From Blastocladiella emersonii ATCC 22665 (Eukaryota > Fungi > Blastocladiomycota): DNA of 64,000 bases. Positions within the stretch are counted from its first letter, which is position 1; the number at the start of each line of letters is the position of its first letter. This document shows positions 1,805 to 28,526 of the stretch, one piece after another. Made by a program: the position numbers and the translations under genes. The notes below the pieces were generated by a model that did not search any database, was not told the origin of the DNA, and saw only the letters and a list, made by a program, of their open reading frames with translations. The stretch is taken from assembly GCA_025594325.1 (NCBI GenBank), contig JANHCV010000012.1, positions 806,001-870,000 on the forward strand, written 5' to 3'.

Positions 1805-3058
1805 GGTGGCGAGGTGCGTTTTGATGCGTTGCGATGAGTTCCGTGGTAGGAGGGCTATAGAGGGGAGAGAGAAGGGAGGGTTAGCGAGCGGTCATCGCCT
1901 CCCCCGCACCACCGCCACGCTGTGCGCCACACTCGAGCGCCGAATTTTCTGCGCGCGGGGCAACGGGCGCCAGGGAAGCCTTGATCGGCTGCCCTGATCG
2001 AGAAGAGATGGCGGTCGGCCGTACCAGAGTTTCCTCGCGGAGGGCTAGCCTCGTGCGGGCGGGTGAGCGAGATGGGCGAGGCACGCCGGGAAAAGAAACC
2101 CGCGTACCCAGGCTCAGGTGGACGACGACGACCTCCGTTTGGGCGAGTTGTCGCGCATGTGGCCGGCCAGCGGGCGCACACGCAGAGGGCCTCGACCGAC
2201 GCCAAGGACGACGAGGTGAGGAGGAGGAAGAGCCTTGGCGCGGCCCGACAAGGGGGGCGGGCGACTGACGAGGCGGGTCAAGGGTTCTCCCGTCGAGCGG
2301 GCGAGCGAGCAAACGAGGGTATCGCAGAGGGGGGTATGCGGCAGGAGAGCGAGCGAGCGGCCGGCGTAGCGAGGACCCGGCTGACGGATCGGATCCGGTG
2401 CAGCAAGTTGCGGCAGGTCGCCTGCGATCCCGGACCAGCCAGGCGATGATGGCGAAGGCCGCGATGTGTCACACCCGCGAGCGCGCGGCGGTTGTCGATG
2501 CGTGGGTGCGGATCTCCGAGCAGCAGCGGCAGCGCGGGGATCGGTAGTGCTACGGGTCGTCGATTCGGTGCAGCCAGTGGTTGGTTCGACGCGGCCGGAG
2601 CGAGTTGCAGGCGGTGCAGATGCGCATATGCTCGGGCCGGACAAGGGGACGCGCGGGATACGGGATACGATACAGCGGCGCGCGGAGGGCCCGTGTCTCC
2701 CCTCCCGCTGCGTGCATGTGTGTGTCGCCGCGCGGGCGCGAGCGGTGATGCTCCACACGCGTGCGCGCGAGCAAGCCGGGCGGGAGACGCCGCGTGAACT
2801 GAACGCGGGAGGACTACCGCGGACACGTACTGGCTCGCTATTTTCTTGACGAGTAAGCGAAGCGCTTGAATGCTCGCCGTACCGACGGCGTGGCCGAGAA
2901 ACGACGGACGAGAGACGAAACGCGTCGCGTCGCGATATCATGTGACCCGCCGCACGTGGCTGCGGGACGCGTCCTGCGTTGCGCGCGCTCGGGTGGCCCG
3001 CACCCCGCGAAGCCGACTCGCCTTCAAGTTCTCGCCAGGGCCCATCGATGAAGCAAAC

Positions 3059-4348
3059 ATGACACGGCGGCCAACAACTTCATGCATTCCACTGCGGGAC
3101 CCGAGTTACGACACTGCGCATTGCTCGCCGCTTCTCTCGGCCTGTCTCTCGCCACCGGTCGGCATATCTGTTGGAGTCCCGTTTGATTTGCCCAATGCTG
3201 CATGTGCCTCGCGTCTCGAGCAAGACCCTTCGGTAGCCCGGCCGACGCTTCGCCCTGAACTCACGCCGCGCTCGAGCGCCGTCGTTGCTCGGGTGTCGCC
3301 ACGCTTGAGCGTCGTCGCTCGGCCATCGCCACGCTACACCGTGATCTCGAACTCGAACTCTATCTCGCATGCGCTTTTGACTAATATCAGCACCAAGCCG
3401 AACCGTTGCACTGCGCTTGAACCGCCCCTTGCCGCCCAGTCCTCAAGCTCGAACTGTCGCTCCCGCACTTCCGTGACCGCGCCCAACACGGGTGCCGATG
3501 CGGCACCGAAGCCTTGGCAGCCTTGGCACGACTCTCTCATCGACTTCCCTAGCTCAAGCTCGCACTCGAATCCGGCTTTATCTCGACCAAACGATAACCT
3601 TGCACGGGCGGAACCATCACTCACCACGCCGACCTCTCGTTCGAACGCGAACTCGCGTACTCCTTTGATTGCTCTCGTGTCCAACCTTGCCTTTGCACCC
3701 GCGGAGGCACCCGCGGAACCATCACTCGCCGCCGCTCCGACTCCACCCTCGAACACGCTTGATTTCCTGGCCGAAGTCTCCTATTTTTTGACTCAAAGCG
3801 TGCTCAGTTTACAGGCAGACGTCGTGTCCGAGGTCGATCCTCCCGTCTCGCCCTCGCCCACGCTTGCCGACGGCGAGGGGCAGGCCGACATTCCACGTCC
3901 TCTGCACACCTATTACGAGCTCGTCTCCATGGCCATTGCATCGACGCCTGACCGCATGGCGACCATCGAGCACATCTACGATTATCTCCAGACGAACTTC
4001 GCGTACTTCCGATGCGGTGACGTGCCCACAAAGCGGGTACGTTTTGTCACTTCGTTTGCTTCGTCGTGCGTGTACTAGTAGTAACCCGCCGTACCATTTC
4101 ACGTGTAGAAAGCGATCCGCAGTGCGCTCAGCCGCGGGCGCTTCACCCTCGTCCCCGCCGACGAGCGCGCTCCGTACCGCCCGCCCAGACCCAACGGCCG
4201 CCGCATCTTGTATTGGAAGTCTTGCGAGGACCATCCCGCCGAAGTTCTTGGGACCGAGGTTCGCGAACTCGGCGCTGCGACGAGCCCGATTTCCGCTGGC
4301 GCCGCGGCCCGTGAGCGCCCGTCCAAGCGGCGGCGAACCGCGCGGTAG
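3059..4348 (+). CDS. Divergent forkhead-domain protein, array copy 1 (single FKH, intact)
   Basis: RPLHTYYELVSMAIASTPDRMATIEHIYDYLQTNFAYFR; intron 4037..4108; exon 2 KAIRSALSRGRFTLVP..RILYW; C-terminal basic RPSKRRRTAR. Confidence 0.85.
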
Positions 4349-4571
4349 ATGAGCTCAACCAAGTGACCGCCTCGATATACTTAGCTTGATGACTTGTGTG
4401 AGTGGAGACACGCGATGGGAGACGCGAGGCGATATCATGTGACGTCCGCTTGATCACGCGTAGCTGCGAGACGCGTCGCGTCGCGTCGCGCGCGACGGTC
4501 AGCACCCCGAGTATCGACCGCGAAATCCGCTCGCGATCAAGTTCCCACCCACGGCCTTGTATGAAGAAATC

Positions 4572-5639
4572 ATGGAGCATCGACCAGCAACTGCATGGAC
4601 TCCCCAGCGGGACCCGATCGACGACGCCGCACCTTGCTCGCCGGATCTCCCGGCCTATAACTCGCCACCAGTCGGTATATCGTTTGATCTGCCCACCACC
4701 ACTCATGGTTTCGGGTGCAAGCACGAGTCTCTCATTCTCCCGCGGACGGAGTTGTCCGAAATTCGCCTTGTCCTTAAACCGCCTGTACACAACTGTCCGG
4801 AATCGCCTCGCGACACTCGTACCGCGTACTCGAGCGCTAAATCGTCTGCAATCTCGGACGCAACCAATCCGGAACAGCGTCTTCTCCCCGAGCCATCACT
4901 CCCTACACCGCTCGCTCGCTCGGGCGCGAGCCTGAGTGATCCTGCGGCCATTCCCTCGCCGCAAGACCTTCCCGTCGCACCAGCCGAGCCATCTCTGCCA
5001 GCCCCGACCTCTGGCGCGACCTTGAGCTCCGTCTCGCTTACCTCTTCGGCCGACACGGCCTCTCTCTCCAAATCAAGCCAGCTTGATCCAGCGGCCGGCG
5101 ACGACGCGTCCGAGGCCACCCGTTTGGCCACGCCTCCCCCCGCGAAAGCCGAGGGACAGGCGGACCTCCCTCGTCCTCCGTACAGCAACCTCGAGCTCAT
5201 CTGTATGGCCTTGGCATCGAAAACCGACCGCATGGCGACCATCGAGCACATCTACGACTTTCTTCAATCGCGCTTCGAGTATTTTCGATGTGGCGACGTG
5301 CGCAGGAAGCGGGTACGTCTCACTCTCCCTTTCCCGAAAAACAACTGCTACGCGTGCATCCAATAACCCGACCTTTCGTTCGACGACGTCGTGTAGAAAG
5401 CAATTCGTTCCGCGCTGAACTATGTCCCCTACTTTGCCCGCGTCCCTGCAAGCGTGCGCGCGCCCTCCTACCAGCCTGGATTGAACCGCCAACCGCTCCT
5501 GTACTGGACGGTTCACGAGTCGGTGATTACGCAAGTGCTCAAGCCAAAGGCCCGCGGGGGCGGGGCGGCGGTGTGCCTGGATTCGGCGCACGACGACGCG
5601 GGCGGTGAGCCTCCGGCTAAGCGGCACCGGGCCGAGTAG
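4572..5639 (+). CDS. Divergent forkhead-domain protein, copy 2 (single FKH, intact)
   Basis: RPPYSNLELICMALASKTDRMATIEHIYDFLQSRFEYFR; intron 5313..5396; exon 2 KAIRSALNYVPYFARVP..LLYW; ends PPAKRHRAE. Confidence 0.88.
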
Positions 5640-5858
5640 TCGTTGGTTTTAGGGTTACGGCTGCCTCGATATAGATATACATGGGTTTGGCGACTTGTGA
5701 GTCGGGACACGGTGGTGTGAGACACGATGTGAGACGCGAAGCGAAATCATGTGATGGCTGCGCCACAACCCAGCTTGTCGATCATCGCTGTGTCTCAGGG
5801 GCTTCAGGGCGCACATCACCTCACCGTGAAGCCGAAGAACCAACCAAGCTCATGAAAC

Positions 5859-7575
5859 ATGGACACGTCACTTGCAGCATTTGGATTTACACTCAACTTG
5901 ACGCTGTGCTCAGCCGGTCGCAGCGCCGAAGGAACCTCGCCGCCACGGTCGCCGTCCCCGTCCCTGTCGCTCCCGGCATGCGACTCGCCGCCCGCTGGGC
6001 TGTCAGTGACTTCCTCGCTTCCCACCGAAACCCCGATTGCATGGGCCGTTTCTGCGCTTCCATGTGGTCCCTCGCCGCCTCGCCCAGTCTGGTTCCCTGC
6101 GGACGCCGACTCAGTCTCTGCGAAAAGCTCCGTCTGGGACTATGCGCTTGATGTGAGCGCTTCGCTATCCGAAGAGGATATCTATCTACTTGCTCCGGCT
6201 ACCGACGTCTCGGTGGACCAGCGGACAACGCTTCAGTCGGCATACGATGTCACGGTTGGGGCCGAAATCGACTCGTTTCCCCCCGCCGCACGGCACGCTT
6301 GCCCCGCACGACGTCAACGGTAATTCCGATATTCCGGTCGATCGGCCAGAGCTTGTCTCATCTTCGCTTCACGTGTCACCACCTCGATGCCAGTTTGTGA
6401 CGGAGGCTTCCACAGATGATCCTTCAGCTGCTTCGTCCTGCTCCCCGCAACCGACTCGTTCTCTACCAACTGCACCGACGACCCGATTTCCGATCCCGCT
6501 CGATTTACTCCCCTCCCCAGCGCCCGAATTTTGGCACCGCGGTATGCTCGAGCTGGCGGTCGCGGACCCATCGGACGGAACCATGCACCAGCGGCCGCAG
6601 CAGTCCATTACTCAGCTCATCCTTGAAGCTCTTGCGGCGTCCTCCGACCGCGCAGCGTCGACGGCTGAACTGTACGAGTGGTTCCCTATGCATCACCCGT
6701 ATTTCCGGTTCGCCAACACCAAGCGGTGGCAGGTTCGCACGCTGATTCCGTGTCTGGTGATAAATCACGCAAACTGACGCAAGCTTCCGCGCGTAGAAGG
6801 CCGTCCGCAGCACCTTGATCAACAACCCGATCTTTGAAAGCTTTCGCACTTCACGCCCCCCTCAATGCTACAAGTGGCACGCTAATGCCGCCCATACGGC
6901 TCGGATGGATACCCACGAGAGCACGCGTGCTGGACTTTCGCCCGCTACAGTGTTAGCCGCTCCAACTTTGGTCAAACACGACTCGTCGGGAACCAATCCA
7001 GCGGCGCAAGTGCACCAGCGCACTCCGTATGATCCTGATTTTGGCACCGCGCCCGCTGCCTCACACGCCAGTTCGTCAGAGGGTGTTGGCGGTGATCCCA
7101 ATGCCAAGCTCTCGGCCACCGATCCCGCAACCGGCCAAGTTCATTGGCGCCCGCGCCTGTCGTGCGTCCAACTTGCCAGCTTGGCCTTTGCCTTTTCCGC
7201 GGCGGTTGATCGCCGGCTGACCCTGCCGCAGATCGTGGACTACATCCAGCTGCGGTTCCCCTACTTTCTGTTCAGCAGTTCCAAGAGATTGCGCGTATGT
7301 CATTGATCCCCGTTACGGCGCGGCAGCAGTAATTGACATGGTTGCACCCAGCACACTTGTAGAGCTCGCTTTCAGACGCTACGCGCGCGCATCCTGCGTT
7401 CTCATCAATCGCGGGAGCGCGGACTGGACCGAAGAAGAAGGGCACCGCGTTGCCTACCTGGACGATCTCGGAGGAAGACCTCGCGGCGTTGCTCCCTTAT
7501 GCCACTGACCTTTTCGCTTCTGCAGACTCAGGGAGCAGCGAACGCGAATTGAAGCGGCGCCGGACTGCGGCGTGA
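5859..7575 (+). pseudogene. Double-forkhead gene, copy 3; +1 frameshift in the N-terminal region (pseudogene or assembly error)
   Basis: ORF 5859..6323 switches frame to ORF 6190..6777; a C6 run at 6279-6284 is a candidate site. Two FKH domains with introns 6733..6798 and about 7296..7361. Last exon WTISEEDLAALLP..LKRRRTAA*. Confidence 0.75.
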
Positions 7576-7802
7576 CGGTGCGATAGATGAGCTCAACTCT
7601 GAACATGTCCAAATATATGTTTTGCTCGCTCTGAAATGGAGCCGCGACGTACTACCTACGGCGTATGACGTGAGACACGACGTGAGACGCGAGGGGAAAT
7701 CATGTGATGGCTGCGCCACAAGCCAGCCGATCGGTCATCCGCGCATCAGGGGCACACAACTTCTCTCGCCGTGGAGGTCAAAACCAATGAAGCTGATGAA
7801 AC

Positions 7803-9050
7803 ATGGACACACCACTTGCAGCATTTGAATCTACACCCAACCCGAGGCAGTTCTCGGCCAGTCGCAGCGCCGAGCAGACCCCGCCGTCGCCGCTGCGGTC
7901 GCCGTCTCCGTCTCTGTCGCTCCCGGAGTGCGATTCCCCGCCCGTTGGCTTACCTCCAGCTTTCCTGTTTCCGACAGAGCACTCAGCTGCTTGGAGCCCT
8001 CCTCCCGTGCCTCAGTTTGGTACCTCGTCGCCTCCTCCGAGTCATTTCGCTGCAAGTATCGAGGTTGCGACCTCGCTGACTTGTCCCCGAGCCGATGAAG
8101 GGCCGTGTGTGAACGAATCTTCGACCGAATCTGAGTCTGCCTCGCTCGCGCTAGCCGCAAGTCCTCCTTGTTTCACTTCCCCGTCTTGTTCCACACAGCC
8201 AGCGCTCTCTACCTCGCCAACTCGTTCTCCTATCCCGCTTGCGTCACAGGGCGCCCGGGCGCCGAATATTTGGCATCGTGGCATGCTTGAGCTGGCCGTC
8301 GCGGACCCATCGGACGGAACCGTGCACCCGCGGCCGCAGGAGTCCATTACTCAGCTCATCCTTGAAGCTCTTGCGGCGTCTCCCAACAACTTTGCGACAA
8401 CGGCCGAAATCTGTACCTGGTTCACCGCGCACCACTCTTATTTCCGTTTCGCCAATGCCAAGCGGTGGCAGGAACGTGCTCTCTTGTTGCGTTGCAGCAG
8501 ACGCGTAGACTGACGTTCTCGCTAAACTGTAGAATGCCGTTCGCACCACCTTGACCAGCAACCCGGCCTTTGAAAGCTTCTACACTTCGCGTAATAAGTC
8601 GCTCAAGTGGCGAACTTCTGCCGGCCGACCAGCTCGGGCGGATAACAGCAGTGGCGAACCCGCTGGACTTTCCGCGGCTCCAGTGGCAACCGCTCCGCCT
8701 TTGGTCAACCACGACTCGTCAGGGAGTGATGGATCGGATCAAATGCATCAGCACGCTACGCTTGGCCGTGATTCCGACACCACATCGGCTGCATCGCATG
8801 CCTTTCCGCCGCAGAAACTGCGTGGCGTTCCCAGTGCCAAACTCTCGGTCACGGATCCTGTCACCGGCGAAGTTCATTGGCGCCCGCCCCTGACGTGGGC
8901 GCAGCTCGCCGGCTTAGCTATTACTGCGTCAGTCGACCGCCGGCAGACTCTGCGTCAAATATTCGACTACGTCCAGATGCGGTTCCCCTACTTCCGTTTT
9001 GGCAACGCCACTACAATGCACGTAAGTTGGCCCCACGGTGCGGTGCAGCA
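7803..9050 (+). pseudogene. Double-forkhead gene, copy 4; first splice donor lost and 3' end truncated
   Basis: Close paralog of copy 3. The donor reads TGGCAG|GAACGT at 8472 instead of GT. The second intron starts GTAAGT at 9022 but runs into an unrelated minus-strand fragment; no last exon. Confidence 0.78.
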
Positions 9051-9266
9051 GCAGCGGTTGCTCGTCGCCTCGCGTGCGTTCTCGGCGTCAATCTCGGCCT
9101 AGAGGGCGCGCGAGAAGGTCTTGAAGTCGGCGTCGCGCTTGAGCGTCACAATGTAGCGGTCCTTGAGCGACACGGGCGCGCGCACGCCGTTGTTGGGAGC
9201 CGCGTTGGTCAAGGAAGCCGTCGCGAGCACGAACGCGAGAGCGGTGATGAGGGCCTTGATCTGCAT
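9050..9266 (-). pseudogene. 5' fragment of a secreted subtilisin-like (S8) protease: signal peptide plus start of an I9 propeptide
   Basis: MQIKALITALAFVLATASLTNAAPNNGVRAPVSLKDRYIVTLKRDADFKTFSRAL* then AEIDAENAREATSNR. Hydrophobic signal plus a YIVTLK motif typical of I9 propeptides; TAG at 9099-9101; no catalytic domain. Confidence 0.6.
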
Positions 9267-10256
9267 GGTGGTGGTGTCGGTTGCCGTCGGTGCGTATAGT
9301 GTTCCAACTTCGATGATTGATCTACTGCTTGTCTGTCGGGTCCACGCTGGGAGAGAGGGGGAGCGGCTGGTATTTATTGGTTCCGCACTGCAGCCGTGCG
9401 CAGCGGAGCGATGCGCTGGCCACCGCTCACCCGAGCCCTCGCATTCGCTGCTGCGCCTCACGGGCCATCATGGGGCCGGGTCGCTGAGCGTGCGCATGCG
9501 CGCGAGCTCGACTCGTCGGCCATGTGGGCCACAAACTTGCGAGCTCGTGCACGCTCAACGCCACATCTTCCTCACGCGCACACTGCCTCGCCGTGATCTG
9601 TCCCCATAACCCGCGGACGGAGCCAGCTCGCGCGGATGAGTGTTCACGGGGCCGGTCACGGGAAAAAGGCTCCCCGTAGAGGACGTGCGCACGCGCGCGG
9701 AAACGAAACCGCTTGGCCCACGGACGCACGCGCGCGAGTTGCTCGAGATGTCTCGCGTGATCGAGACACTGTTCTAGAAATGTGTGACATCGACGCGTCT
9801 GGTGCCCGAGGTATCGCATCGTGACAAAACCCGGCATTGGCAAGGGCCTCATAAACAGTGCTCGTCGAAACGCCCTCTTGCTGTCAAGTTGAACATGAAC
9901 AAATTCTACGCGTCGCGTTTCATTCCAGGCAGCGATGAAGCGACAGCCACCGACTACGTGGAGCTGCACGCGTGAGGAAGCATGATCGGCGCGTGGACTC
10001 TGCTTGAAAACATTTGTCCAAAGTGCTGATGAAAAATCGTGTCAAGTATCGTGCGTGTGAATTGTGATGTGCATGAAGCCACTGAACTTGCACGGAAATT
10101 TATGGCGAGCGCCGCCAACGGGAAGTAGCGCGCCCAGCGACGCGACGGGATATCATGTGATGGGCGGCGCCACACTCGGAGACAGGTTCTCCAGCCTTCG
10201 CGCGAGCCGGCTTGCCGTCGATAAGCGTCACTCCACTTAATAAAGCGAATGGAATT

Positions 10257-11970
10257 ATGGATCCCTCACTTTATGCATTTGCATCTTTGCCCAATGAACA
10301 GCCGATTGCGCCCGCGCAGCTGTCAAAGTCGAGTTCACGGTCGCGGTCGCCCTCCCCGGCTCTCTCACTTCCTTGCTGCGACTCTCCGCCCGCCGGGTTG
10401 TCAGTTGATTCCATTTTTATGAATGAGCACCCAATCGCTTGGGACTCGTCTGCGCCTCAGTTCACCCTCTTCCAGTCCTGCAGACCCAATTCCCACGCGA
10501 GCGCCGCGGCCATGGTCGCGGCCCCTTGTGAGCGAAGTGCGGGCACCTTTGTACCTGCAGCTCTAGTAACTGAACTCGAAGAACCATGCAATGCTGAGCC
10601 CCAAACGTTGGATGCGAATTACGGTTCATCAAACCTGGCGTCCGAGCTGCACGACATTGCTGCACCTCGCTCGCCGAGTACCGACGCAACTGTTTCCGAC
10701 GGCAATCCAGCATCGTCCGCGAGTCCATTTTCGACTTGCGTGACCAATGAACTCGAAGAGTACGTTGGCGCCAACTCGGGATGCCCACGCACGTTGGGCG
10801 TAATCGCATCCACCCGCTCGCCCGCGCCAATCTTGCAGCCAGTATCGCTCGCGTCGACGGCTACTTTACCTGAGGCGAATTCGGCAACCTTGACGCGTCT
10901 GCCGCCCGAAATCTGGCACAGGGGTCTGCTTGAACTAGCAACAACCGATCCCTCAGATGGGACGGTGCACCACCGGCCGCCGAAAATCAATTACCGAGCT
11001 TATCCATCTCGCATTGGACGCAACACCCAGTCACGCCAAGACTTTGCCGAACATTTTTGAATGGATTCGGGCCTACCACCCGTTCTATCGGTTCGCTGAC
11101 ATCAAACGGTGGCAGGTAAGTGAAGCATTCGCCCGCGCGCAGGTGCTAAGAGTTGAGACTAATCCACGCGCACAAATGTAGGCGGCGCTTCGCGCGACTT
11201 TGGTCAACAACCCGGAATTTGAAGAGTTTCGCGCTTCGCCAACTGGCCCAAAGAAATGGCGGGCAATTACCGCGCAAGCGACGCATGCACCGCTGCTTGA
11301 CCAGAGTTGCCAAGTCGACGATCTCCCTACGCCCGAGACGCCTGAATCCGTGGTCCGGGCTTCACGCAACATGGTCACCAAGCGTAGCAGGAGCGCAATA
11401 CTCGAACCTCTTGGCGTTCCGCTCACTACGCCAGACATCGCGGCTGGTATTTTGGATTGCTCTGCATCTCAACCTGCCGCTTCCCGCCGTGGCGTAATTA
11501 AAAACCCGCGCCGACTGAACAAGCATGAGCGTTCGACCACTGACCCCGCGACTGGCGAGGTCCACCAGCGCCCAAACCTATCGTACTTGCAAATCGTATG
11601 CATGGTCTTCGCAGCATCGGCTAATCGCCGGCTGACCGGGCAAGAAGTTTATGACTGGGTCCAAACGCGATACCCGTTCTTCCGCTTTGGCAACGTCGCA
11701 GGGAAACGCGTACGATTTGGTCATGGTGTCACACCGCAGAACGTTTTCTGATGCGCCGCGCGCTTGTAGGCTGCAATTCTTCAAACCCTGAGCAAGCACG
11801 ACATGTTCACTCGCGCGTCAGGTAGTCCAGGGCCGCAGCGTTCAGGGCCAGTTATCTGGACCATCACCGAGGAAAACCTTGCAGAGCTTCTCCCTTCGAG
11901 CTTTTTTGAGCTTTCAGCCGAAGAACTTGCGGAAGCAAATGCTCTGAAGAGGCAGCGAACGGTGGGCTAA
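10257..11970 (+). pseudogene. Double-forkhead gene, copy 5; +1 frameshift at the start of FKH1 (pseudogene or assembly error)
   Basis: An A4 run at 10983-10986 breaks RPPK|SITELIHLAL. Introns about 11116..11179 and 11710..11769. Last exon AAILQTLSKHDMF..WTITEENLAELLP..LKRQRTVG*. Confidence 0.78.
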
Positions 11971-13373: not shown

Positions 13374-13514
13374 CCAGTACTGACGTGACGAATTCGCTGG
13401 ACGCGACTTGCTCGCCGTGTCACAGTCCCAATACGCCAATGTACATTCCCGCTCAACTTGAAAGGCGCTAGCGGTATACAAAACTGTCTCTGGAATGCGC
13501 GTCTGTCGGCGGTC

Positions 13515-13987: not shown

Positions 13988-14013
13988 CCTGGAATCATGT
14001 GACGAGCTCATTT

Positions 14014-18069: not shown

Positions 18070-18534
18070 CTACTGAATGAAAATCTCGAGGATGCGCTTG
18101 CGCTTCGATTCGGACACGGCCATGACGCGAAGCGCTTGATCCTCGGTCAGGCGGGTGGCGACGTCGATCTGGTACTCTTCATTGTCGTTGTACGCGTCCT
18201 GGACCCATTCAAGTGCGGCGGTCAGGACGGGCTTGGAGTCGGCGGTCGCGACGCTCTGGAACACCTCCTTGATGCCCATGAGGAATTCCGAGTCCGAGAG
18301 GCGACGCGAGCTGCTGTCCGAAGTGCGGCTGCGCTTGCTGGCGGGGGCCGCGTCGTCTTGACCATCGACACCTTCCACGTCACCAGACTCCTTGCCGTCC
18401 TGCTCGAGGTGCGAGTACTCGCCGGTGGTGGTCGAGCTGCCCCACGAAGGAAAACAGCGTTTATATAGGCCGGGAAGCACAGCCTGAAGGTTTCGGGGGC
18501 GAGCAGACGGGCAATTCAGCGACAAGGGTTCCAT
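18070..18534 (-). CDS. Harbinger second ORF (ORF1-like), probably only its C-terminal part
   Basis: 154-aa ORF convergent to the transposase inside the TIRs; ends ..DVATRLTEDQALRVMAVSESKRKRILEIFIQ. No recognisable Myb/SANT tryptophan repeat. Confidence 0.5.
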   Translation of the reverse strand: MEPLSLNCPSARPRNLQAVLPGLYKRCFPSWGSSTTTGEYSHLEQDGKESGDVEGVDGQDDAAPASKRSRTSDSSSRRLSDSEFLMGIKEVFQSVATADSKPVLTAALEWVQDAYNDNEEYQIDVATRLTEDQALRVMAVSESKRKRILEIFIQ

Positions 18535-18671
18535 TCAGCTCATCCGGGGATCGACCCAAACGCCGCGATGAACGCGACGGGGTGAAAATGCCACGTTTCA
18601 GCTGGGTGAACACCGGACCGTGTAAAATCGATTGATCCACCTGATTCACCCCGGAACCAAACGGGCCCTTA

Positions 18672-19797: not shown

Positions 19798-20209
19798 GAC
19801 GATGCGTGGGCAGGCTGGTCAGCCGGTTAACGATACATCGGCGGAGCGCACGAGGGCTGCCGCTGCCTTGGCCGTACTTTTATCGCGACAGTTTCGTGGA
19901 CACACCCTGGACGGGTTCCGCCACGCGCCTGGAACCACGTGAGTGGTGCAACGCGTATCCGATCCGCACCACTGCTGCCGCGAAAACGCATGCCATCGCT
20001 ATAAACTTGCTGAAGCTTTCTTTGAGGACGCCAACGAGACAAACGGACCCAGCCTCGCGCGCGGAGACATGTCTCGCAGAGCGACGCGTAGCGATATCGC
20101 GTGAAGGCCACGCGACGTGGCTGAGGGGTCTGACCAGCCGATCAGGGCCAAAGTGCGGGACAGCTTCGCAACGCCTCGCTGACGCGACAAGGGCATTAAA
20201 ACGTAGCGA

Positions 20210-21978
20210 ATGAACGCAAAGTGCACTTCACTTGATGCAATGATATCGGCACCTAATGAGCAGCTGAATTCCCGGAGCTCGAGCGATGCGCGCACCGCGA
20301 CACCCCCGCGGTCGCCGCCCTCCCCGGGCCTATCACTTCCGCGATGCGACTCGCCGCCCGCAGGCTTTTCGGTGGATGACGACATGGCCGCCGTTGAGCT
20401 TTTGGCTTCGCGCGGCCCGCTTCAAGCTCAGCTCAGTCCAACTCCGCCTGCTTCGCTCAATCACCACACGCCTGACTTGGCCTCCGCGGCAGCGCCGGCG
20501 TCTCCATCGAACACGGCGCTCGGCAACGGCGACTTTATGCCCGCTTGGCAAACTCGAGTTCAAAGTTCACTCAGCAACAGTCTGCAGCCGTCGCCGCCGC
20601 GACAAGTCTTGGACGGCTACCATTCTCGCCCTGGATCACCCTCATTTTCGCGCGATTCATCTTGCACGATCAGCGACACCGACGACATATCAGGCGTTCC
20701 TTGTCCCGACTCATCCCTTCTCGTTTATCCATCCACCTCGATAGATGGTTCGAACGGGTCTGCATCAGCCGTTCCGCACGCTCCCATGTCGCGGACCACC
20801 GCTACCAGTCCTTCCCTTCATCAACCCGTTTCAACCGCGCCGGCGACGATTTCATCGGCAGCCGCCGCGAGTACAGCTCCTCTGCCGTTTTCTTCCGTTG
20901 CCTGGCACCGACGACCACTCCAGTTGGCGGCCGCTGATCCGTCGACCGGAGCGGTCTATCCCAGGCCGTCAGAAACCATTTCGCAACTCATTCTTGCAGC
21001 ACTCGCTTCGATGCCTGACCGTGTGGCAACCGTGCCTCAGCTTTTTACATGGTTTGTCGACAACCACCCTTACTTTCGATTTGCGAGCGAGAAACAGTGG
21101 AAGGTACGCAATCACCGCGCACAAAAATTAGGTTCGCGGCATAGTTGACACGAGTCAAGGAATGTAGCCAGCCGTTCGCACTACCTTGCAAAATAATCCG
21201 CTGTTCGAGTCCTTTGGCGCGACGCGACTCGAGGGCATGAAATGGAGGGTTCTCGATGCTGAATTGCCTCGGAATTCGCTTAACGCTGCTCCTGTTTTGG
21301 CCATTGCCGCCACGGCTGCATCTGCAGCGGCTGGGACCAGCAGCGCTTACCGTGCACAACTTCCGCCGACTTCTCGCTCACTCGCGTCGCACCACCGTCC
21401 CGCGCTGCCGCCAGAGCTCGCCCCGGCCAGAAAGCGGGCGCGAGGTGCCGACCCGGTTGAGCTCTTTGTCACCGGTCCTGACGGAACAGTGTACCCTAGG
21501 CCCGCCATTTCGAAGGCGGAGCTGATCTGCGCGGCGCTCGCAGCCGCTCCTGATCGCAGTTTGACAACACGCGCAATTTGCGACTGGATTCAAGACCGCT
21601 ACCCGTACTATCGGTTTGGGAAGGTAGATGGGAAACGTGTACGTTTCAGCCGTGTGCTAGTGTCTCCACCTCGCTCGCTGACATGTCGCGCGCGCCGTTC
21701 AGAAAGCCATCGCAGTCACATTGCAGTCTCACTCTGCCTTCCACAACCTTCGAGCCCAGTCGTATGGGAGGGGCGGGCCGGGTCTTTGGACCATCTCGGA
21801 GGCGGACCTTTCTGCCATCTTGCCTTCTCGACCGCCCGCGCAGCGCGAGCAACTACCCACAACGCCCGCAAACGTTATGCCCGCGGCGTCCATGAACATT
21901 GTGCCCGCGGCACCCGTGACCGTTGTGCCTGCGGCGCCCACGAGCGTTGAGGTCGTGTATGTGAGCGACTCTGAATAA
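20210..21978 (+). CDS. Double-forkhead protein, copy 8 (intact)
   Basis: Two FKH domains with introns about 21104..21167 and 21639..21702; helices PAVRTTLQ and KAIAVTLQ; WTISEADLSAILP; ends EVVYVSDSE*. Confidence 0.85.
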
Positions 21979-22336
21979 ACTCTTGCTGACTTCAATCCGA
22001 TGAAGACTACCGCCCTCAAACATCAGCCTGTGCCACGCGTGAGCGATCGTGCCGCCTCGACCGCTCCGCTTCTGCGTGGGCGATCACCTTGGAGTTCGGT
22101 CCAACCGCAGATCCGGAAATGCCTGTTTCCAAACCATCATTGGAGTTCGAGAACATGCAAGGTGCGCGTGCAACAATGCCCTACGAAAGGACGCGTCGCG
22201 ATATAATGTGACAGTCACGAGATGTGGCTGGAGCGGCTGGAACCAGTCCCCCAGCCCGCGTCGGCGAAACCTCGAGGCGATCGTTTCTCCCGGAGCCATG
22301 TACGTGCAGCAAATATCACAACGTAACTTATGAACA

Positions 22337-23317
22337 ATGCACCCTCCACTTGGCGCAACTAGCTCAGCAGCTTATCAATGGCCAGGCGCGCGCAAGCAAA
22401 GCGCGAGTCAGCTCTCGCCACCGCGGTCGCCATCGCCTTGCCCGTCGCTTCCGGACTGCGCATCGCCGCCGGTTGGGATATCTGCGGACTGCGTGTCGCT
22501 TGCACCGTGGCCTCCATCGCTCTTTCTTCCCTCGCGCGATTGGGCCGATACTGTGTCAAGCTCCTCTTTCGATCCACCGCTCGATGACAGCGACCGGCTC
22601 CAACCGAGTCCGCTCAGCGTCGCTTACAGCGGTCGTGCGTCACTTGCGGCGCCACATTCGCCGCTCAGTACCCCCGATGTTCGTCAACCCGACGCCGCAG
22701 CGACAGGTCCTTATGCTACCCCTAGCTTGAACGGATCCAGCCGCGAGTCTTCTTCCCCGGCCGCCTTGCTTACTTCAGAAACCGCGTCTCCCACTTCGCA
22801 CCGCGCTTCCGCTTCCCCGCGCCCGCGCACCACCACGCTTAGCTCCGTCCGCAAGCGCCCTTACGCGACCCGTCCACCAGGCCGCCCGACCAAACGCTCG
22901 GCCGAAACCACGGTCACCGACCCCGTCGACGGAACCGTCCACGTGCGCCCTGCCGCGAGCTACCCGCAGCTGATCGCCATGGCGCTCACGGCGGCACCCA
23001 GTCGGCAGCTGACGGTGCGCGAGATCTACCACTGGATCCTGGACCAGTATCCGTTCTATCGGTTCAGCAACGTGGCCAAGGTCCTTGTACGTTCTATCGT
23101 CAATGCACGATCCTCGACTCTGCTGACCCGCGCGCGCGCTGCTTAGAAACAGCTCCAAAAAGGTGCGGTCCGGCACCCGGCCTTCGTTCAGGCTGGGGTT
23201 AAGAAACTCGGTGCGGCAGTGGTGCCAAACAGTCCGGGGATCTGGACCTTCTTGGACGCGGCAAACTTGGCGGAACTCTTGCCCTCGCGCTGCGCGCCTG
23301 TGCCAGACGGCAAGTAG
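22337..23317 (+). CDS. Forkhead protein, copy 9 (single FKH, intact)
   Basis: RPAASYPQLIAMALTAAPSRQLTVREIYHWILDQYPFYRF; intron about 23087..23146; KQLQKGAVRHPAF..PGIWTF. Confidence 0.88.
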
Positions 23318-23700
23318 GTGTGAGCAACGGCGGCGACTATGCGGGCGCGCAACAAAGAATAGACGCTCCCTCCCTTGCTACGATGATTATTGCGCGGCAG
23401 GATTCGTTTGGCAGCTCGCGAGAGACGATGTGCGACGGGGACGTTGCAGAATTCTTGAGTTCGCGCGTCCTTGTGCTTGAGCCGCTTAGCGAGCGGGTAT
23501 GAATGGAGGGCGAATTTCAACGTTATGTAGGCTCGCGTAGAGACATGTCTCGCACAACGAAGCGTCGCGATATCGCGTGAAAGTCGCGCGAGGTGAGGGA
23601 CCGGACGCCAGACGCGCGAGACGGCTCCACCGCAGGTCGCCTCCTCGGCAATGATACTGTAACGTAGCGAATGAACACAACGCGCGCTTGACTTGGTGCA

Positions 23701-25402
23701 ATGATATCAGCGCCCAACGAGCAGCCGAGTGCATTGAACTCAGGCGCTGGGCGGACCGCGACGGTCTCAAGGTCCCCCTCACCGACCCCGTCACTTCCGC
23801 GATGCAACTCGCCGCCCGCCGGTTTGGCGGTTGGTGATGGCATGGCCGCAGTCGAGCTTTCGAATTCGCGTGGCCTGCCTCAAGCTCAGCTTGCTTCATC
23901 CCCACCTTTTCTGCTCGACGTTCACGCGCCCGACGTGACCTCCGCGGCCGCCCCCGCTTCTCCGTCTCCGTCGGCGCTCAACGATGGTGGTTTCCTGCGT
24001 TCTTGGCAAACTCGAGGTCAAAGTTCGTCCGGCAACGATCCGCAGCCCTTACCATTGCATCGATTCTCGAACGACCACCACTCTCAGCTCGGAGTACCCT
24101 CGTTTTTGCCCCAGTCAACTCGCACGACAAGCGGCAGCGACGACATTCCAGCCGTTCCTGATCCTGCCCCACCTTTTCTTTGCGTGACCGACGATTCGAG
24201 CGTTTCCGCCATGGCCGTTCCTGACATACCCTTGTCGCGGACTCCTGCTGCCAGTCTCTCCAATCGTCCGCCCGTCGTTCCTACACCGGTGCTCAGCCGC
24301 GTGAGCTCAACGGCAGCCGCCGCGAGTACATCTCCCCCGCCGTTCGCTTCCATTGCTTGGCACAAAAGACCACTCGAGCTGGCGGTCGTTGATCCGTCGA
24401 CCGGAACCGTTCACCCTCGGCCGTCGGAGACCATCTCGGGGCTCATTATCGCGGCACTTGCTTCAATGGCCGGCCGCGCGGCGACTCTTCATCAACTCTT
24501 CGCGTGGTTCGTCGAAAACCACCCGTATTTTCGATTTGCTAACGCCAAGCGCTGGCGGGTACGCAATCATCACTGGAAACTGTTCGGTTCCATGGTAAGT
24601 AGGCTGACACGATCGGGGGAGTGTAGGATGCAGTTCGCGCGACATTGCACGGCAACCCGATGTTTGAGTCGTTTGGCGCTACTCGACTCGAACCCATGAA
24701 ATGGAGGGAACTAGCTGCCGACTTGCCTCGCAACTCAGTTGACGCGGCTCCGGTGACTGCAGCTCCGCCGGCCTCAGGAGCAGCTGCCACGGGCGAATCT
24801 CTCCATGCGCACCAAGCGCAACATACTAGGGGCGCTCCTTCGCGCGCGCCGCGCAGCCGTCCCGCTCCGCCATCGGGACTTGTATCATCTGACCCGCCTC
24901 GGAAGCGGGCGCGAGCTTCCGATCCGGTCGAGGCCTTCGTCACTGGCCCTGACGGAACAGTGTACCCTCGGCCCGCCAAGTCGAACGCGCAGCTGATTGG
25001 CGCGGCGCTTGCAGCCGCTACTGATCGCAGTCTGTCGACACGCGCGTTTTACGACTGGATTCAAGACCGCTACCCGTACTATCGGTTCGGGAACGTGGCT
25101 AGGAAACGTGTACGTCCCGCTCTGGTGCATGGTTGTTGCCGCACTCCACTAGACTGACATGTCGCGCCGTACAGAAAGCCATCGCGAAAAGGCTGTATAC
25201 CCATCCTGCCTTCATCAACGTGCGACCCCACACAAGCGGGAAACGCGGACTGGGTGTATGGACCATCTCGGAAGCGGAACTTGCAACAATTCTGCGCTCC
25301 CGACCGCACGTGCAGCACGAGCAACTTCCCGCGGCGTCCGTGAACGCTGTGCCCGTGCCGCCCACGAACTTTGAGGTCGTGTACGCGAGCGACTCTGAAT
25401 AA
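23701..25402 (+). CDS. Double-forkhead protein, copy 10 (intact; closest to copy 8)
   Basis: Introns about 24559..24626 and 25110..25173; helices DAVRATLH and KAIAKRLY; ends EVVYASDSE*. Confidence 0.85.
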
Positions 25403-25765
25403 ATCGCCGCTGTTTCCAATCCGGAGCAATTCCACCGTACACCGCCGTCCGCGGATGGTAGCCTGCGCCGCGCGTGAGCAGCGCGTCGCATTGACCGCTC
25501 CGAGTCTGTGCGGGGTCTCGATCTAGAGGTCTGCCCGAACGTAAAGTCGGGCCGCCTGTTTTAGAACACTGTATTGCCGCTCGGGAGGATCCCCAGGGTA
25601 CGGGTGCGATCACACCTCCGCTCGGACGCGTCGCGATATAATGTGACAATCACGCGATATGGCCCGGGTGGCTGAAACCAGTTGGTCACCGCGTTGGCGA
25701 AAGCATGCAGCAGCACCTTTCTCGGCATCGCTTCCGTAAAGAGCAACTTTGAACGTAGCTTATTA

Positions 25766-26784
25766 ATGATGCAGTACCCACTTGGCGCAACTGAATCAGC
25801 ATCTCTTCAATCGCCGGGCACGCGCGATCACGGCGCTGGTCCGTTTTCGTGGCTGTGGTCGCCCTCGCCCTCGCCTTGCCCGCCGCTTCCAGACTGCACA
25901 TCGCCACCTGCTGGGATACCATTGGACTTTCTGTACCCCGAACCGCAGCCGCCGCCTACTTTCTTCCTCGCTTCACACGACTGGCCCGGTCTGGTCCCGG
26001 CGCCAAGCGTTTCTTTCGTCCCATCGCTCGAATGCAGTGACCCACTTCAATCGAATCCGCTTGGTGCCACGTACCTCGCCCCGTCGCCGCTGCCGCCACC
26101 ACCTTTGCCGTCCAATACCTTCGACGGTTACCAGCCCGGCGCTGCATCAACTGACCCGTCGACGAACCCAATCCCGGCCGGATCAATCCGCGCGCCTTCC
26201 CAACTTGTCTCACAAACCGCGTCCCCCATGTCCCAGCGCACTTCTGCTTCTGCTTCTGCTCCTGCTTCTGCTTCTGCTTCTACACGGCCGCGCACCCCCG
26301 CGCACGGCTCCGTCCGCAAGCGTACGCGAGCGAGCCGCACGAACCGCATGGTTGAGACCTCGGTAACCGATCCCGCCAACGAAACCGTCCACTTGGGCCC
26401 TGCCGCGAGCTACCCGCAGCTGATCGCCCAGGCGTTTGCGGCCACGCCCAGCCGGCAGCTGACGGTGCGCGAGATGTGCGACTGGGTCCAGTCGCGCTAC
26501 CCGTTCTATCGATATCATAACGTGTCCGGCGGGGTTCGGGTACGTCCGATTGACTGACTGGTACCGATCGGCACCTCCCTCATTGACGCACACTCGCGGG
26601 TTGGTTGGGTTGGCAAATGCTCAAGAAAGCCGTGGCCCGGCACCCCGCCTTCGTTCAGGTCGGGACCCAAGTGAGTGGGGCGGTAGAGCAGCCGAACAAC
26701 CCGTGGATCTGGACTATCGTGGCAGAGGACGACCTCACCGAAATCCTGCACTCGCACGCGCTCGCGCGGGGCGAGCAGGGGTGA
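25766..26784 (+). pseudogene. Forkhead copy 11 (single FKH); canonical splice acceptor lost
   Basis: GPAASYPQLIAQAFAATPSRQLTVREMCDWVQSRYPFYRY; donor GTACGT about 26540. The acceptor position reads GG at 26612-26613. An in-frame cryptic AAG 12 nt downstream could rescue splicing. Confidence 0.65.
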
Positions 26785-27029
26785 GCGGCGGCCGTCGTCG
26801 GCGTGAGCGTCCGGAAGAATATACGCGTGTGATTGCTCTGATATTGGGGTAGTACTCTCAATACGATGATGCGGGACTCGATCGGATATCATGCGATTGA
26901 GTGGGACCACGATTCGCGGTGAACGAGCGAGGGGGAGACAAGCCATACACCCCGCGAAGCGTAAACGAGCAAACACGATGAGCGAAGACGCGAGCGAGCG
27001 AACGACGCGAATCCACGCAACGCAAAGGA

Positions 27030-27156
27030 GCGGAGCTTGCACTCTCGACCACCCGCGCAGCACGAGCGACCTCCCGCGGTGCCTGTGATCGTTGTTCCCG
27101 CGCTGTCTGCGCCGCCCACGAACGTTTAAGTCGTGTACGTGAGAGATTCTGAATAA
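27030..27156 (+). pseudogene. Relic of the last exon of a third copy-8/10-type gene
   Basis: ..CCGCCCACGAACGTTTAAGTCGTGTACGTGAGAGATTCTGAATAA matches the 3' ends of copies 8 and 10 (PTNFEVVYASDSE*), with an in-frame stop. Confidence 0.65.
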
Positions 27157-27536
27157 ACCCTCGCTGATTCCAACCCGACTCGAACATACCAGAGGCTGCC
27201 GTCCGCGAAGCTCGGCCTGCACCGCGAACGAGCAGCTGCACCGCCTCGAACATCCGTGTAGGCTCACGTCACGCTCTGGAGGTCGGTCCGAACGTAAATC
27301 CAGGGGACTGCTCGATTTCGAAACAACAACAACTCTCGAGAAGGTGAAAGGAGCGGGGCAAACATACCCTGCTCACGGACGCGTCGCGATATAATGTGAC
27401 CGTCACGAGATGTGCCCAGGGTGGCTGAAACCGGCCGCTCAGCGCGCGTCAGCGAAACCTTGAGGCACCGCCCTGGGCACCGCCCCTCTCGGAGCCGTAA
27501 CCCGAACGAGAAACACGTCAACGTAGCTTATGAAAG

Positions 27537-28526
27537 ATGCACTCTCTACTTGGTGCAATCGCATCGTCCGCTGCTCATCCATGGCCGAGCACGCGCGGTC
27601 AAGGTGCTGGTCCGCTCTCACCGCCACGGTCGCCCTCGCCCTGCCCGTCGCTTCCGGACTGCGCGTCGCCGCCGGTCGGGATATCGGTCGATTGCATGCC
27701 TCCTGCATCGCCTCCGCCAGCCTTCTTTCTCGATTCGTGCGACTGGCCCGACCCGGCGCCACGCTCATCGTTCGGCTCAGCGCTCGGTTACATCGGCCCG
27801 CATCGACCGTGCCCGCTCGGCGCAGTTTACAGCGCCCCTTCGCCACTTCCAACGCCGCTGTCGCCGCTACATACCCTTGACGCTCATCACTTCGACGCCG
27901 CAGCGGCAGCTGACGCGTCGCCGGTCCCGCAAAGCTTGGACAGATCCAGCCGCGAGCCTTCTTCATCCCCAGCGGCCGCGCCCGTTTCCGAGACCATTTC
28001 CTCGCCCTCACGGCCCGCTCCTACTTCTTCCCCACGGCCGCGCACCACTGGCACCGTCCGCAAGCGTCCCACCACGACCCGCCCCGCCACCCGCGCAGCC
28101 AAACCCTCCACCGCGACCGACCCCGCCGACGGAACCGTGCACTTGCGCCCTGCCGCGAGCTACCCGCAGCTGATCGCCCAGGCGCTCGCGGCCGCACCCA
28201 ACCGGCAGCTGACGGTGCGCGAGATGCTCGACTGGGTCCTGGCTCGGTATCCGTACTATCGGCTCGGCGACGTGGCCAAGGTCCTGGTACGTTCACCACT
28301 CCGGTCTTTGTGGTTGATCCAGCTGACCCGCGCGCGCGCGCTGGCTGCGTAGAAACGGGTCAAAAACGCCGTGGTCCGCCACCCGGCCTTCATCCAGGTC
28401 GGGTTCAGAACCCGCGGCGCGATACGGCTGCCGAACAGCCCGGGGATCTGGACGATCGCGGACGCGGACCTCGCGGAGCTCTTGCCTTCGCGCGGGGCGA
28501 TTGTGCAGGGTGACGAGCAGGTGTGA
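27537..28526 (+). CDS. Forkhead protein, copy 12 (single FKH, intact; closest to copy 9)
   Basis: RPAASYPQLIAQALAAAPNRQLTVREMLDWVLARYPYYRL; intron ends at 28352; KRVKNAVVRHPAF..PGIWTIADADLAELLP. Confidence 0.88.

What the first reader, a model, noticed from the sequence alone, without database searches (positions are those of the whole stretch)
2920..28526. Tandem array of 12 divergent forkhead genes with hypervariable recognition helices: a possible KRAB-ZNF-like TF cluster in a basal fungus
Seen: 12 co-oriented FKH genes plus 2 relics in 26 kb, 17 FKH domains, five genes with two domains. After splicing, helix 3 reads KAIRSALS, KAIRSALN, KAVRSTLI, SSLSDATR, NAVRTTLT, AALRATLV, AAILQTLS, NSLRATLR, KCISNALC, PAVRTTLQ, KAIAVTLQ, KQLQKGAV, DAVRATLH, KAIAKRLY, QMLKKAVA, KRVKNAVV. 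Known: the canonical helix is NSIRHNLS, whose Asn and His read RYAAAYA, and fungi usually have only a few FKH genes. None of these 16 keeps the His and only two keep the Asn, while the hydrophobic core (helix 1 LI..AL, helix 2 I..W, YPYFR, wing W) and basic NLS-like motifs are kept. Inference: a birth-and-death family of nuclear proteins with either diversified DNA specificity (e.g. tracking mobile DNA) or lost base readout (decoys, chromatin binders).
Basis: partly seen in the sequence, partly recalled or inferred. Interest (0 to 1): 0.9.

Follow-up and report, generated by a model that had tools for sequence, protein, structure and literature searches.

The report
Divergent forkhead gene array in Blastocladiella
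A 26-kb stretch of the water mould Blastocladiella emersonii holds 12 tandemly duplicated forkhead genes that keep the protein fold but have lost the DNA-reading residues; seven copies look intact and five damaged, and whether they are expressed or bind DNA is untested.

Summary
The window is Blastocladiella emersonii ATCC 22665, contig JANHCV010000012.1. Positions 2.9-28.6 kb carry 12 co-oriented forkhead genes: 17 N-terminal half-domains, 16 C-terminal halves, and five two-domain genes. Every half-pair is split by a phase-0 intron at the same codon. All 16 helix-3 strings are exact. None keeps the canonical His and two keep the Asn.

The spliced domains align to canonical forkheads over the whole fold (hhalign 99.65%). 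They form one clade, so the array grew from one ancestor. Helix 3 has specifically lost constraint: identity is 0.28 against 0.76 in canonical domains, while other segments are equal. Its exposed positions give dN/dS 0.85 (CI 0.35-2.6), against 0.36 for the core and 0.17 for its buried positions. That shows purifying selection on the fold but does not demonstrate positive selection on helix 3. The exposed face stays basic (36% Lys/Arg).

Eleven genes share one near-invariant promoter element. Five of the 12 genes carry probable disabling lesions. GC3 is 0.58-0.74 against about 0.9 in neighbouring genes. No RNA data could be reached. The public annotation calls only two chimeric models here.

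Verdict: a real, lineage-specific, birth-and-death forkhead family. The KRAB-ZNF analogy is unproven.

The parts
2934..4348 (+). g1. Promoter element at 2934. Start codon at 3059, chosen by homology to g2. Exons 3059-4036 and 4109-4348. One forkhead domain with helix 3 KAIRSALS. C-terminal KRRRTAR. Intact.
4431..5639 (+). g2. Promoter element at 4431. Exons 4572-5312 and 5397-5639. One domain with helix 3 KAIRSALN. Intact.
5743..7575 (+). g3, two domains. Promoter element at 5743. The N-terminal ORF from 5859 carries the SPSP..LPxCDSPPxG motif but lies in a different frame from the forkhead part (open frame from 6157), and no usable intron connects them, so a frameshift is probable. Exons end at 6732, then 6797-7294 and 7363-7575. 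Helix 3 strings are KAVRSTLI and SSLSDATR. The first donor is a weak GTTCGC.
7696..9102 (+). g4, damaged. Promoter element at 7696. Exon 7803-8471. The intron donor at 8472 is GA instead of GT. Helix 3 is NAVRTTLT. The second forkhead N-half at 8872 has no C-half, and the sequence breaks off at about 9.1 kb against a minus-strand secreted-protein stub.
   Evidence: sequence identical in independent DNA contigs
10149..11970 (+). g5, two domains. Promoter element at 10149. Start codon at 10257. A frameshift at about 10985 lies inside helix 1 of domain 1. Later exons are 11182-11709 and 11770-11970. Helix 3 strings are AALRATLV and AAILQTLS.
   Evidence: no difference in DNA contigs X1 and X2
12096..13373 (+). 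g6. Promoter element at 12096. Exons 12203-13117 and 13176-13373. One domain with helix 3 NSLRATLR. Intact.
13554..13733 (+). Relic of a g3b-like terminal exon (wing plus TISEDLAALL) with a stop codon where the wing Trp should be.
13842..14473 (+). A (GAGACGC)x17 microsatellite at 13842-13962, followed by g7 (13974-14168 and 14231-14473). g7 has one domain with helix 3 KCISNALC. It has no start codon, no N-terminal region and no promoter element of its own.
14497..14525 (+). Orphan copy of the shared promoter element (GAGACGCGTCGGGATATCATGTGC) with no forkhead gene behind it.
14682..19797 (.). Interruption of the array. It holds two minus-strand ORFs (14682-15434 and 18672-19742, no Pfam hit) and a Harbinger-type transposase (16439-17320, DDE_Tnp_4).
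20093..21978 (+). g8, two domains. Promoter element at 20093. Exons 20210-21103, 21168-21638 and 21703-21978. Helix 3 strings are PAVRTTLQ and KAIAVTLQ. The linker carries RKRARG. Intact.
22200..23317 (+). g9. Promoter element at 22200. Exons 22337-23086 and 23147-23317. Helix 3 KQLQKGAV. Intact. The NCBI model KAI9159405 (116 aa) is a chimera of the g8 tail and part of g9.
23569..25402 (+). g10, two domains, a whole-gene duplicate of g8. Exons 23701-24558, 24627-25109 and 25175-25402. Helix 3 strings are DAVRATLH and KAIAKRLY. Intact.
25635..26784 (+). g11. Exon 25766-26539. The intron acceptor AG is lost (TGG at 26611-26613). The C-half is at 26614-26784 with helix 3 QMLKKAVA. Probably damaged.
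27388..28526 (+). g12. Exons 27537-28286 and 28353-28526. Helix 3 KRVKNAVV. Intact. The NCBI model of 225 aa (P0001) fuses pieces of g11 and g12.
28797..28815 (+). Second orphan promoter element, at the right edge of the array, with no forkhead sequence after it.

Best explanation
This is a lineage-specific family of forkhead (FOX) genes.

Shown:
- The family grew from one ancestral FoxK/FoxJ-like gene. An internal duplication of the domain gave class I (N-terminal) and class II (C-terminal or solo) domains, and repeated tandem gene duplication followed.
- The copies are old (dS 0.26-1.7 across the forkhead domains of paralog pairs; 0.5-1.0 over whole genes).
- The family shows birth and death: seven copies are intact, five are damaged, and there are loose relics.
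- The proteins have a Ser/Pro-rich N-terminal region with one conserved motif (RSPSPxxSLPxCDSPPxG), basic NLS-like runs, and one or two winged-helix domains.
- The fold, net positive charge and buried helix-3 residues are under purifying selection.
- The canonical base-reading Asn and His are replaced, and the exposed helix-3 positions evolve about as fast as silent sites.

Inferred:
- The intact copies are co-regulated through a shared upstream element (GACGCGTCGCGATATCATGTGA, 107-149 nt before each ATG).
- The proteins enter the nucleus and still bind DNA through a Lys/Arg-rich helix 3.
- Their sequence preferences differ from RYAAAYA and differ among paralogs. Two-domain members would contact two sites.
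For: - Forkhead identity: Pfam hits on all 17 N-halves. hhalign of the 16 spliced domains against 33 canonical domains gives probability 99.65%, E 5e-25, over 82 columns. The C-half alone aligns in register with E 2e-5. Language-model neighbours are Forkhead clusters. The nearest solved structures are FOXK1 and FOXK2.
- Single origin: the 16 domains form one group with support 95/96, class I forms a clade with 100/99, and the paralogs pair as g8/g10, g9/g11/g12, g3/g4 and g1/g2. All 16 introns are phase 0 at the same codon.
- Selection: domain omega is 0.40 (CI 0.30-0.51) and core omega is 0.36. Buried helix-3 sites give 0.17 and exposed helix-3 sites 0.85 (CI 0.35-2.56). Exposed sites change faster than the core (odds ratio 2.8, p 0.002).
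- Helix-3 identity is 0.28 here against 0.76 in canonical domains. The other segments give ratios of 0.88-1.11.
- Still DNA-like: net charge is +6.1 against +6.5 in canonical domains. The exposed helix-3 sites are 36% Lys/Arg against a 14% background.
- The shared promoter element occurs once before 11 of the 12 genes and is absent from the rest of the window apart from two orphan copies.
Against: - There is no expression evidence. No RNA run could be listed, and the three runs found are DNA.
- GC3 is 0.58-0.74, close to the introns (0.55). Neighbouring genes have 0.89-0.94.
- Five of the 12 genes carry probable disabling lesions.
- The domain omega of the g9/g12 pair (0.84, CI 0.46-1.7) cannot be told from neutral.
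- The C-halves alone give no Pfam hit.
- No structure prediction of a spliced domain was run.
- DNA binding and nuclear localisation are inferred, not tested.
Confidence: 0.6

Rival explanations
1. The domains have lost base readout. They would act as sequence-unspecific chromatin binders (like the globular domain of linker histone H1), as protein-interaction modules, or as decoys competing with canonical forkhead factors.
For: None of 16 copies keeps His and only 2 of 16 keep Asn at the two residues that make the direct base hydrogen bonds (contacts as described in PMC8501956). The exposed helix-3 sites evolve near the silent rate. The forkhead fold resembles the histone H1 globular domain (PMC8501956).
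Against: Arg at the canonical helix-3 Arg position is kept in 8 of 16 copies, and Lys/Arg are enriched 2.6-fold on the exposed face. Class I helix 3 is well conserved (identity 0.60). That is unexpected if the helix no longer reads anything.
Confidence: 0.2
2. The array is a decaying gene cluster with little or no present function. The constraint measured would date from the time before decay.
For: Five of the 12 copies are damaged: a donor changed from GT to GA, a lost acceptor, two frameshifts and a decapitated copy. There are also loose relics. The genes have almost no codon bias. Ab initio annotation missed 10 of the 12 genes. No transcripts were found.
Against: Seven genes have complete reading frames of 307-547 codons with canonical splice sites despite whole-gene dS of 0.5-1.0. 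Core omega is 0.31 in the four pairs of intact genes (CI 0.21-0.46), and buried helix-3 sites give 0.18. A roughly 20-nt promoter element stays nearly invariant while the surrounding DNA has diverged.
Confidence: 0.12
3. The array is a KRAB-zinc-finger-like arms-race family. On this reading helix 3 is under diversifying selection to follow changing targets such as transposons.
For: The family is a tandem birth-and-death array whose variable positions are the DNA-facing ones. A Harbinger element sits inside the array. Similar multi-forkhead proteins with variable helix 3 occur in arthropods with large, repeat-rich genomes.
Against: Omega at the exposed sites does not exceed 1 (0.85, and 0.57 in the intact pairs). 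The duplicates are old (dS at least 0.26 in the forkhead domain, about 0.5 over the whole gene), so turnover is not fast. No repressor domain was found (Pfam finds only Forkhead). No link to any repeat was found.
Confidence: 0.08

Closest known systems
Canonical forkhead (FOX) transcription factors, closest to the FoxK / FoxJ2-3 type (Pfam PF00250; structures 2a3s, 8bzm and 2c6y)
   Same: The fold elements appear in the same order: helix 1, helix 2, the YPYFR turn, helix 3, strand S2, wing 1 and the Trp strand. Net charge is the same. The N-half profile finds FOXK1 and FOXK2 first. The whole domain aligns with hhalign probability 99.65%.
   Different: The N(S/A)IRH motif is absent. No copy keeps His and two keep Asn. 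In class II the Trp before helix 3 is also lost. Helix 3 is the least conserved helix instead of the most conserved one. The C-half alone is invisible to Pfam.
Fungal forkhead genes Fkh1, Fkh2, Hcm1 and Fhl1
   Same: Same superfamily, also in a fungus.
   Different: From general knowledge, those are a few dispersed single-domain genes with canonical helix 3, and Fkh1/2 and Fhl1 carry FHA domains. Here there are 12 clustered genes, five with two forkhead domains, and no FHA domain. A tree against these named proteins was not built.
KRAB zinc-finger gene clusters of vertebrates
   Same: Both are tandem arrays of DNA-binding proteins with birth-and-death turnover, and variation is concentrated at DNA-facing residues.
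   Different: The fold is different, there is no repressor domain, positive selection is not demonstrated and no transposon link was found. The similarity is by analogy only.
Uncharacterised multi-forkhead proteins of arthropods, for example Schistocerca piceifrons XP_047101480.1, S. americana XP_046983359.1, Procambarus clarkii XP_069194085.1 and Bemisia tabaci XP_072162163.1
   Same: Several forkhead domains sit in one protein (3 to 11 or more). Helix 3 departs from N..RH and differs from domain to domain.
   Different: They are not close relatives. They rank high only because the scores of many domains add up. They mostly keep the Trp before helix 3, and their wings differ. They evolved independently. 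Some may be gene models fused across tandem genes.
Globular domain of linker histone H1/H5
   Same: It is a winged helix with the same topology that binds DNA without base-specific readout (PMC8501956).
   Different: No sequence similarity was detected. The similarity here is to forkhead.

Membership tests
Forkhead domain (PF00250) | Significant match to the family profile | tested here: met
   All 17 N-halves match profile positions 1-48 with E from 4e-11 to 1e-3. Eleven exceed the 27-bit gathering score on half a domain.
Forkhead domain (PF00250) | The C-terminal half (helix 3, S2, wing 1, S3) is present in register | tested here: met
   No Pfam hit for any of the 16 C-halves on its own. A profile-profile alignment of the spliced domains covers 82 columns through the wing Trp (probability 99.65%). 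The C-half alone gives E 2e-5 at template positions 48-90.
Forkhead domain (PF00250) | Winged-helix three-dimensional fold | not tested
Canonical sequence-specific FOX factors (RYAAAYA readers) | N(S/A)IRH motif in helix 3, with the base-contacting Asn and His | tested here: not met
   Asn is present in 2 of 16 copies and His in none. Arg is present in 8 of 16. The role of these residues is taken from PMC8501956.
Canonical sequence-specific FOX factors (RYAAAYA readers) | Binding to forkhead DNA motifs | not testable with these tools
   This needs PBM, SELEX or EMSA.
KRAB-ZNF-like arms-race clusters | Tandem array with birth-and-death turnover | tested here: met
   The domains form one clade with paired paralogs. 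Five copies are damaged and there are relics.
KRAB-ZNF-like arms-race clusters | Positive selection (omega above 1) at DNA-contact positions | tested here: inconclusive
   Omega is 0.85 (CI 0.35-2.56) from 20 codon pairs, and 0.57 in the pairs of intact genes.
KRAB-ZNF-like arms-race clusters | A repressor domain and targets in mobile DNA | tested here: not met
   Pfam finds only Forkhead in the long exons. No repeat link was seen. Targets cannot be tested here.

The most novel reading that the evidence does not exclude
Poly-forkhead proteins with a free-running recognition helix would be an unrecognised, recurrently evolved class of DNA-binding proteins. It would have arisen independently in a blastoclad fungus (this array) and in arthropods (locusts, crayfish, whitefly). 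The winged-helix scaffold would be reused with diversified helix-3 faces to read new targets, as a forkhead counterpart of zinc-finger arrays.
Probability: 0.12. Interest if true: 0.85.

Novelty: new variant of a known kind. Interest (0 to 1): 0.6.

Why it matters
Helix 3 of forkhead domains is among the most conserved DNA-reading elements of opisthokont transcription factors. Known changes of specificity mostly leave it untouched.

Here a whole family keeps the scaffold under purifying selection while the reading face is free to change. That offers a natural experiment on how a winged helix can be re-targeted or lose base readout.

It is also a practical warning. Ten of the 12 genes are missing from the public annotation and the other two are chimeric. 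Transcription-factor counts for this model fungus are therefore too low.

Tried and rejected
- RNA evidence. Two run searches listed no RNA run. I suspected X3 of being RNA, but laying it on the window showed unspliced low-depth DNA.
- Word-based protein searches found only the genome's own chimeric model, or nothing.
- Relatives with the same C-half in other organisms. An exhaustive HMMER search with the N-half profile gave 8355 hits. Among the best 150, only P0001 and P0010 (both from this locus) belong to the family. The next best single domains are canonical FoxK/J-like. Only the top 150 can be seen, so absence from Allomyces or Catenaria is not proven.
- Assembly error as the cause of the g4 and g5 lesions. 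Rejected, because independent short-read contigs are identical there.
- An intron to rescue the g3 frame change. No acceptor in the right frame exists.
- Retroposition or a transposon-borne origin. Rejected, because all copies keep the same intron and their own promoter.
- Literature. No paper in the library links forkhead expansion to Blastocladiella, and none holds phrases such as 'two forkhead domains'. The Nakagawa 2013 PNAS paper on forkhead specificity is not held.
- Structure prediction. Left out, because a spliced protein has no reference.

Full report
**Source**

A protein search with one long exon returned a single hit, a 225-aa 'Forkhead box protein K2' of Blastocladiella emersonii ATCC 22665. 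That protein is encoded in assembly GCA_025594325.1, contig JANHCV010000012.1, and its locus overlaps the window. The published annotation of this genome was made ab initio with funannotate, and the paper does not mention transcript data (PMC9730499). In the part of the array covered by the fetched locus (about 16.4-28.6 kb), which holds g8-g12, only two forkhead models are called. Among the best 150 hits of the exhaustive search these two are the only proteins from this locus. Both are chimeras: P0001 joins pieces of g11 and g12 and skips helix 3, and P0010 joins the tail of g8 to part of g9.

- HMMs built from the copies find 17 N-terminal halves and 16 C-terminal halves between 3.9 and 28.4 kb. 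All are on the + strand, and there are none elsewhere in the window.
- Each pair of halves is separated by a 58-84 nt intron. All 16 introns are phase 0 and fall at the same codon, corresponding to WQ|NS of the canonical WQNSIRH.
- Donors are GTACGT, GTACGC or close variants. A CTRAY branch-like site is present in 11 of the 16 introns. Acceptors are TAG (12) or CAG (3).
- This gives 12 genes. Five have two domains (g3, g4, g5, g8, g10).

**Forkhead identity**

- All 17 N-halves match Pfam PF00250 positions 1-48. Eleven exceed the gathering score with only half a domain.
- None of the 16 C-halves matches Pfam on its own.
- A profile of the 16 spliced domains aligns to a profile of 33 canonical forkhead domains over 82 columns, from helix 1 to the wing Trp (probability 99.65%, E 5e-25).
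- The C-half alone aligns in the right register with E 2e-5.
- Language-model neighbours of a middle exon are Forkhead clusters. For a C-half exon alone, 67 of the 100 nearest clusters are Forkhead, at low scores.
- The nearest solved structures are FOXK1 and FOXK2.

**Origin**

In a tree with canonical domains, the 16 domains form one supported group (95/96). The N-terminal domains of the five two-domain genes (class I) form a clade (100/99). The pairs are g8a/g10a, g8b/g10b, g3a/g4a, g1/g2 and g9/g12 with g11. The family therefore came from one gene through a domain duplication followed by whole-gene tandem duplications. The shared intron rules out retroposition. Whole-gene dS between the closest pairs is 0.5-1.0, so even the youngest duplicates are old.

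**What is conserved and what is not**

| Segment | Identity, 16 domains here | Identity, 48 non-redundant canonical domains |
|---|---|---|
| Helix 1 | 0.42 | 0.45 |
| Helix 2 segment (S1-H2-YFR) | 0.38 | 0.34 |
| S2 | 0.33 | 0.38 |
| S3 | 0.37 | 0.38 |
| Helix 3 | 0.28 | 0.76 |

The canonical set was chosen for having Asn and His, which by itself guarantees 0.25 of the helix-3 value.

The loss of helix-3 constraint is mainly in class II (identity 0.24). Class I helix 3 (xAVRTTLx) is as conserved as the rest of that class (0.60). Within helix 3 the buried positions stay small or hydrophobic, while the four exposed positions vary.

| Sites (five independent young pairs) | omega | 95% CI |
|---|---|---|
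| Whole domain | 0.40 | 0.30-0.51 |
| Core | 0.36 | 0.25-0.53 |
| Buried helix-3 sites | 0.17 | 0.04-0.57 |
| Exposed helix-3 sites | 0.85 | 0.35-2.56 |

Exposed sites change faster than the core (odds ratio 2.8, p 0.002). This shows purifying selection on the fold and release, or possibly diversification, of the reading face. It does not show positive selection.

The two residues that make direct base hydrogen bonds in canonical FOX domains are Asn and His of N(S/A)IRH (PMC8501956). Here Asn is kept in 2 of 16 copies and His in none.

The domains nevertheless stay as basic as canonical ones (+6.1 against +6.5). The exposed helix-3 sites are 36% Lys/Arg against a 14% domain background (p 8e-6, not corrected for relatedness). 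That favours continued contact with nucleic acid.

**Other shared features**

- All genes except the decapitated g7 carry an N-terminal RSPSPxxSLPxCDSPPxG motif (weaker in g1 and g2). Its Ser-Pro sites fit proline-directed kinases, which is an inference.
- All carry basic runs: KRRRTA-type tails, RKRAR in the linkers, and VRKRP.
- A near-invariant element, GACGCGTCGCGATATCATGTGA, lies 107-149 nt before the start codon of 11 genes. The same pattern occurs once more, after g12, and nowhere else in the 64 kb; a near copy with one mismatch lies after g7. Neither has a gene behind it.
- Its conservation against a diverged background argues for common regulation.

**Signs of decay**

- g4 has GA in place of the GT donor. 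Its second domain stops after the N-half, at a rearrangement.
- g5 has a frameshift inside helix 1 of its first domain.
- g3 has its conserved N-terminus in a different frame from the forkhead part, with no acceptor that could join them.
- g7 has no start codon and no N-terminal region, and follows a 17-copy microsatellite.
- g11 has lost its acceptor AG.
- The g4 and g5 lesions are identical in independent short-read contigs of the strain.
- A relic C-half with a stop in place of the wing Trp lies at 13554-13733.
- GC3 of the forkhead genes is 0.58-0.74, near the introns (0.55) and intergenic DNA (0.58). Neighbouring genes have 0.89-0.94. This explains the missed annotation and points to low expression or weak selection on silent sites.
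- No RNA run could be listed. The three runs found are DNA.

**Relatives elsewhere**

An exhaustive HMMER search with the N-half profile gave 8355 proteins at E up to 1e-3. Among the best 150, only the two models from this locus share the family's features. The next best single domains are canonical FoxK/J-like.

The top ranks are taken by proteins with 3 to 11 or more forkhead domains from locusts, a crayfish, a whitefly and unnamed assemblies. All are 'uncharacterized'. In these too, helix 3 often departs from N..RH and differs from domain to domain: 127 of 193 full-length domains in the listed proteins are non-canonical. They rank high because domain scores add up, not because they are close kin.

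The library holds no paper with phrases such as 'two forkhead domains' and none linking forkhead expansion to Blastocladiella.

**Verdict**

The array is real, and it is an unusual variant of a known family. The descriptive part is well supported: one origin, birth and death, fold kept, reading face released, shared promoter.

The mechanism is inference, and I put it at about 0.6. On that reading the proteins are nuclear DNA binders with non-canonical specificities that differ among paralogs. An H1-like or decoy role (0.2), plain decay (0.12) and a KRAB-ZNF-like arms race (0.08) remain open.

Noticed in passing
window 2934, 4431, 5743, 7696, 10149, 12096, 20093, 22200, 23569, 25635, 27388 (+ strand); orphan copies at about 14497 and 28797: A near-invariant element of about 22 nt, GACGCGTCGCGATATCATGTGA (an MluI-box-like ACGCGT followed by CATGTG), lies 107-149 nt upstream of 11 forkhead start codons. 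It does not occur elsewhere in the 64 kb on either strand.
   Followed up: partly
window 3048-27540, just upstream of the start codons: A short upstream ATG (mostly ATGAA) sits 7-11 nt before the main ATG in most copies.
   Followed up: no
window 16439-17320 (+): An ORF with DDE_Tnp_4 and HTH_Tnp_4 hits, a Harbinger/PIF-type transposase, is inserted in the gap of the array.
   Followed up: partly
window 14682-15434 (-) and 18672-19742 (-): Two minus-strand ORFs inside the array give no Pfam hit at E up to 0.01. Their GC3 (0.73-0.75) lies between that of the forkhead genes and that of the housekeeping neighbours.
   Followed up: partly
window 9099-9461 (-): A small ORF with a signal-peptide-like start and a subtilisin-propeptide-like end (read by eye) abuts the truncated g4. 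It has no Pfam hit. Short-read contigs break and show extra copies at 9093-9197, so this piece is repeated elsewhere in the genome.
   Followed up: partly
window 13842-13962: A perfect heptamer microsatellite, (GAGACGC)x17, lies directly before the decapitated g7. GAGACGCG is also part of the promoter-element flank.
   Followed up: no
window 22944-22976 and 25052-25087: Short-read contigs of all three DNA runs break at these 33-36 nt stretches, which are shared between paralogs with raised depth. This may mark gene-conversion tracts between copies.
   Followed up: no
proteins P0002-P0009 and P0151 (locusts, crayfish, whitefly, unnamed ENA assemblies): Uncharacterised proteins carry 3 to 11 or more forkhead domains whose helix 3 varies from domain to domain. 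This may be an undescribed class, or gene models fused across tandem genes.
   Followed up: partly
window 671-1804 (-): The left neighbour is a P4-type phospholipid flippase fragment (PhoLip_ATPase_N) with GC3 0.89. It marks the edge of normal high-GC3 coding sequence.
   Followed up: no
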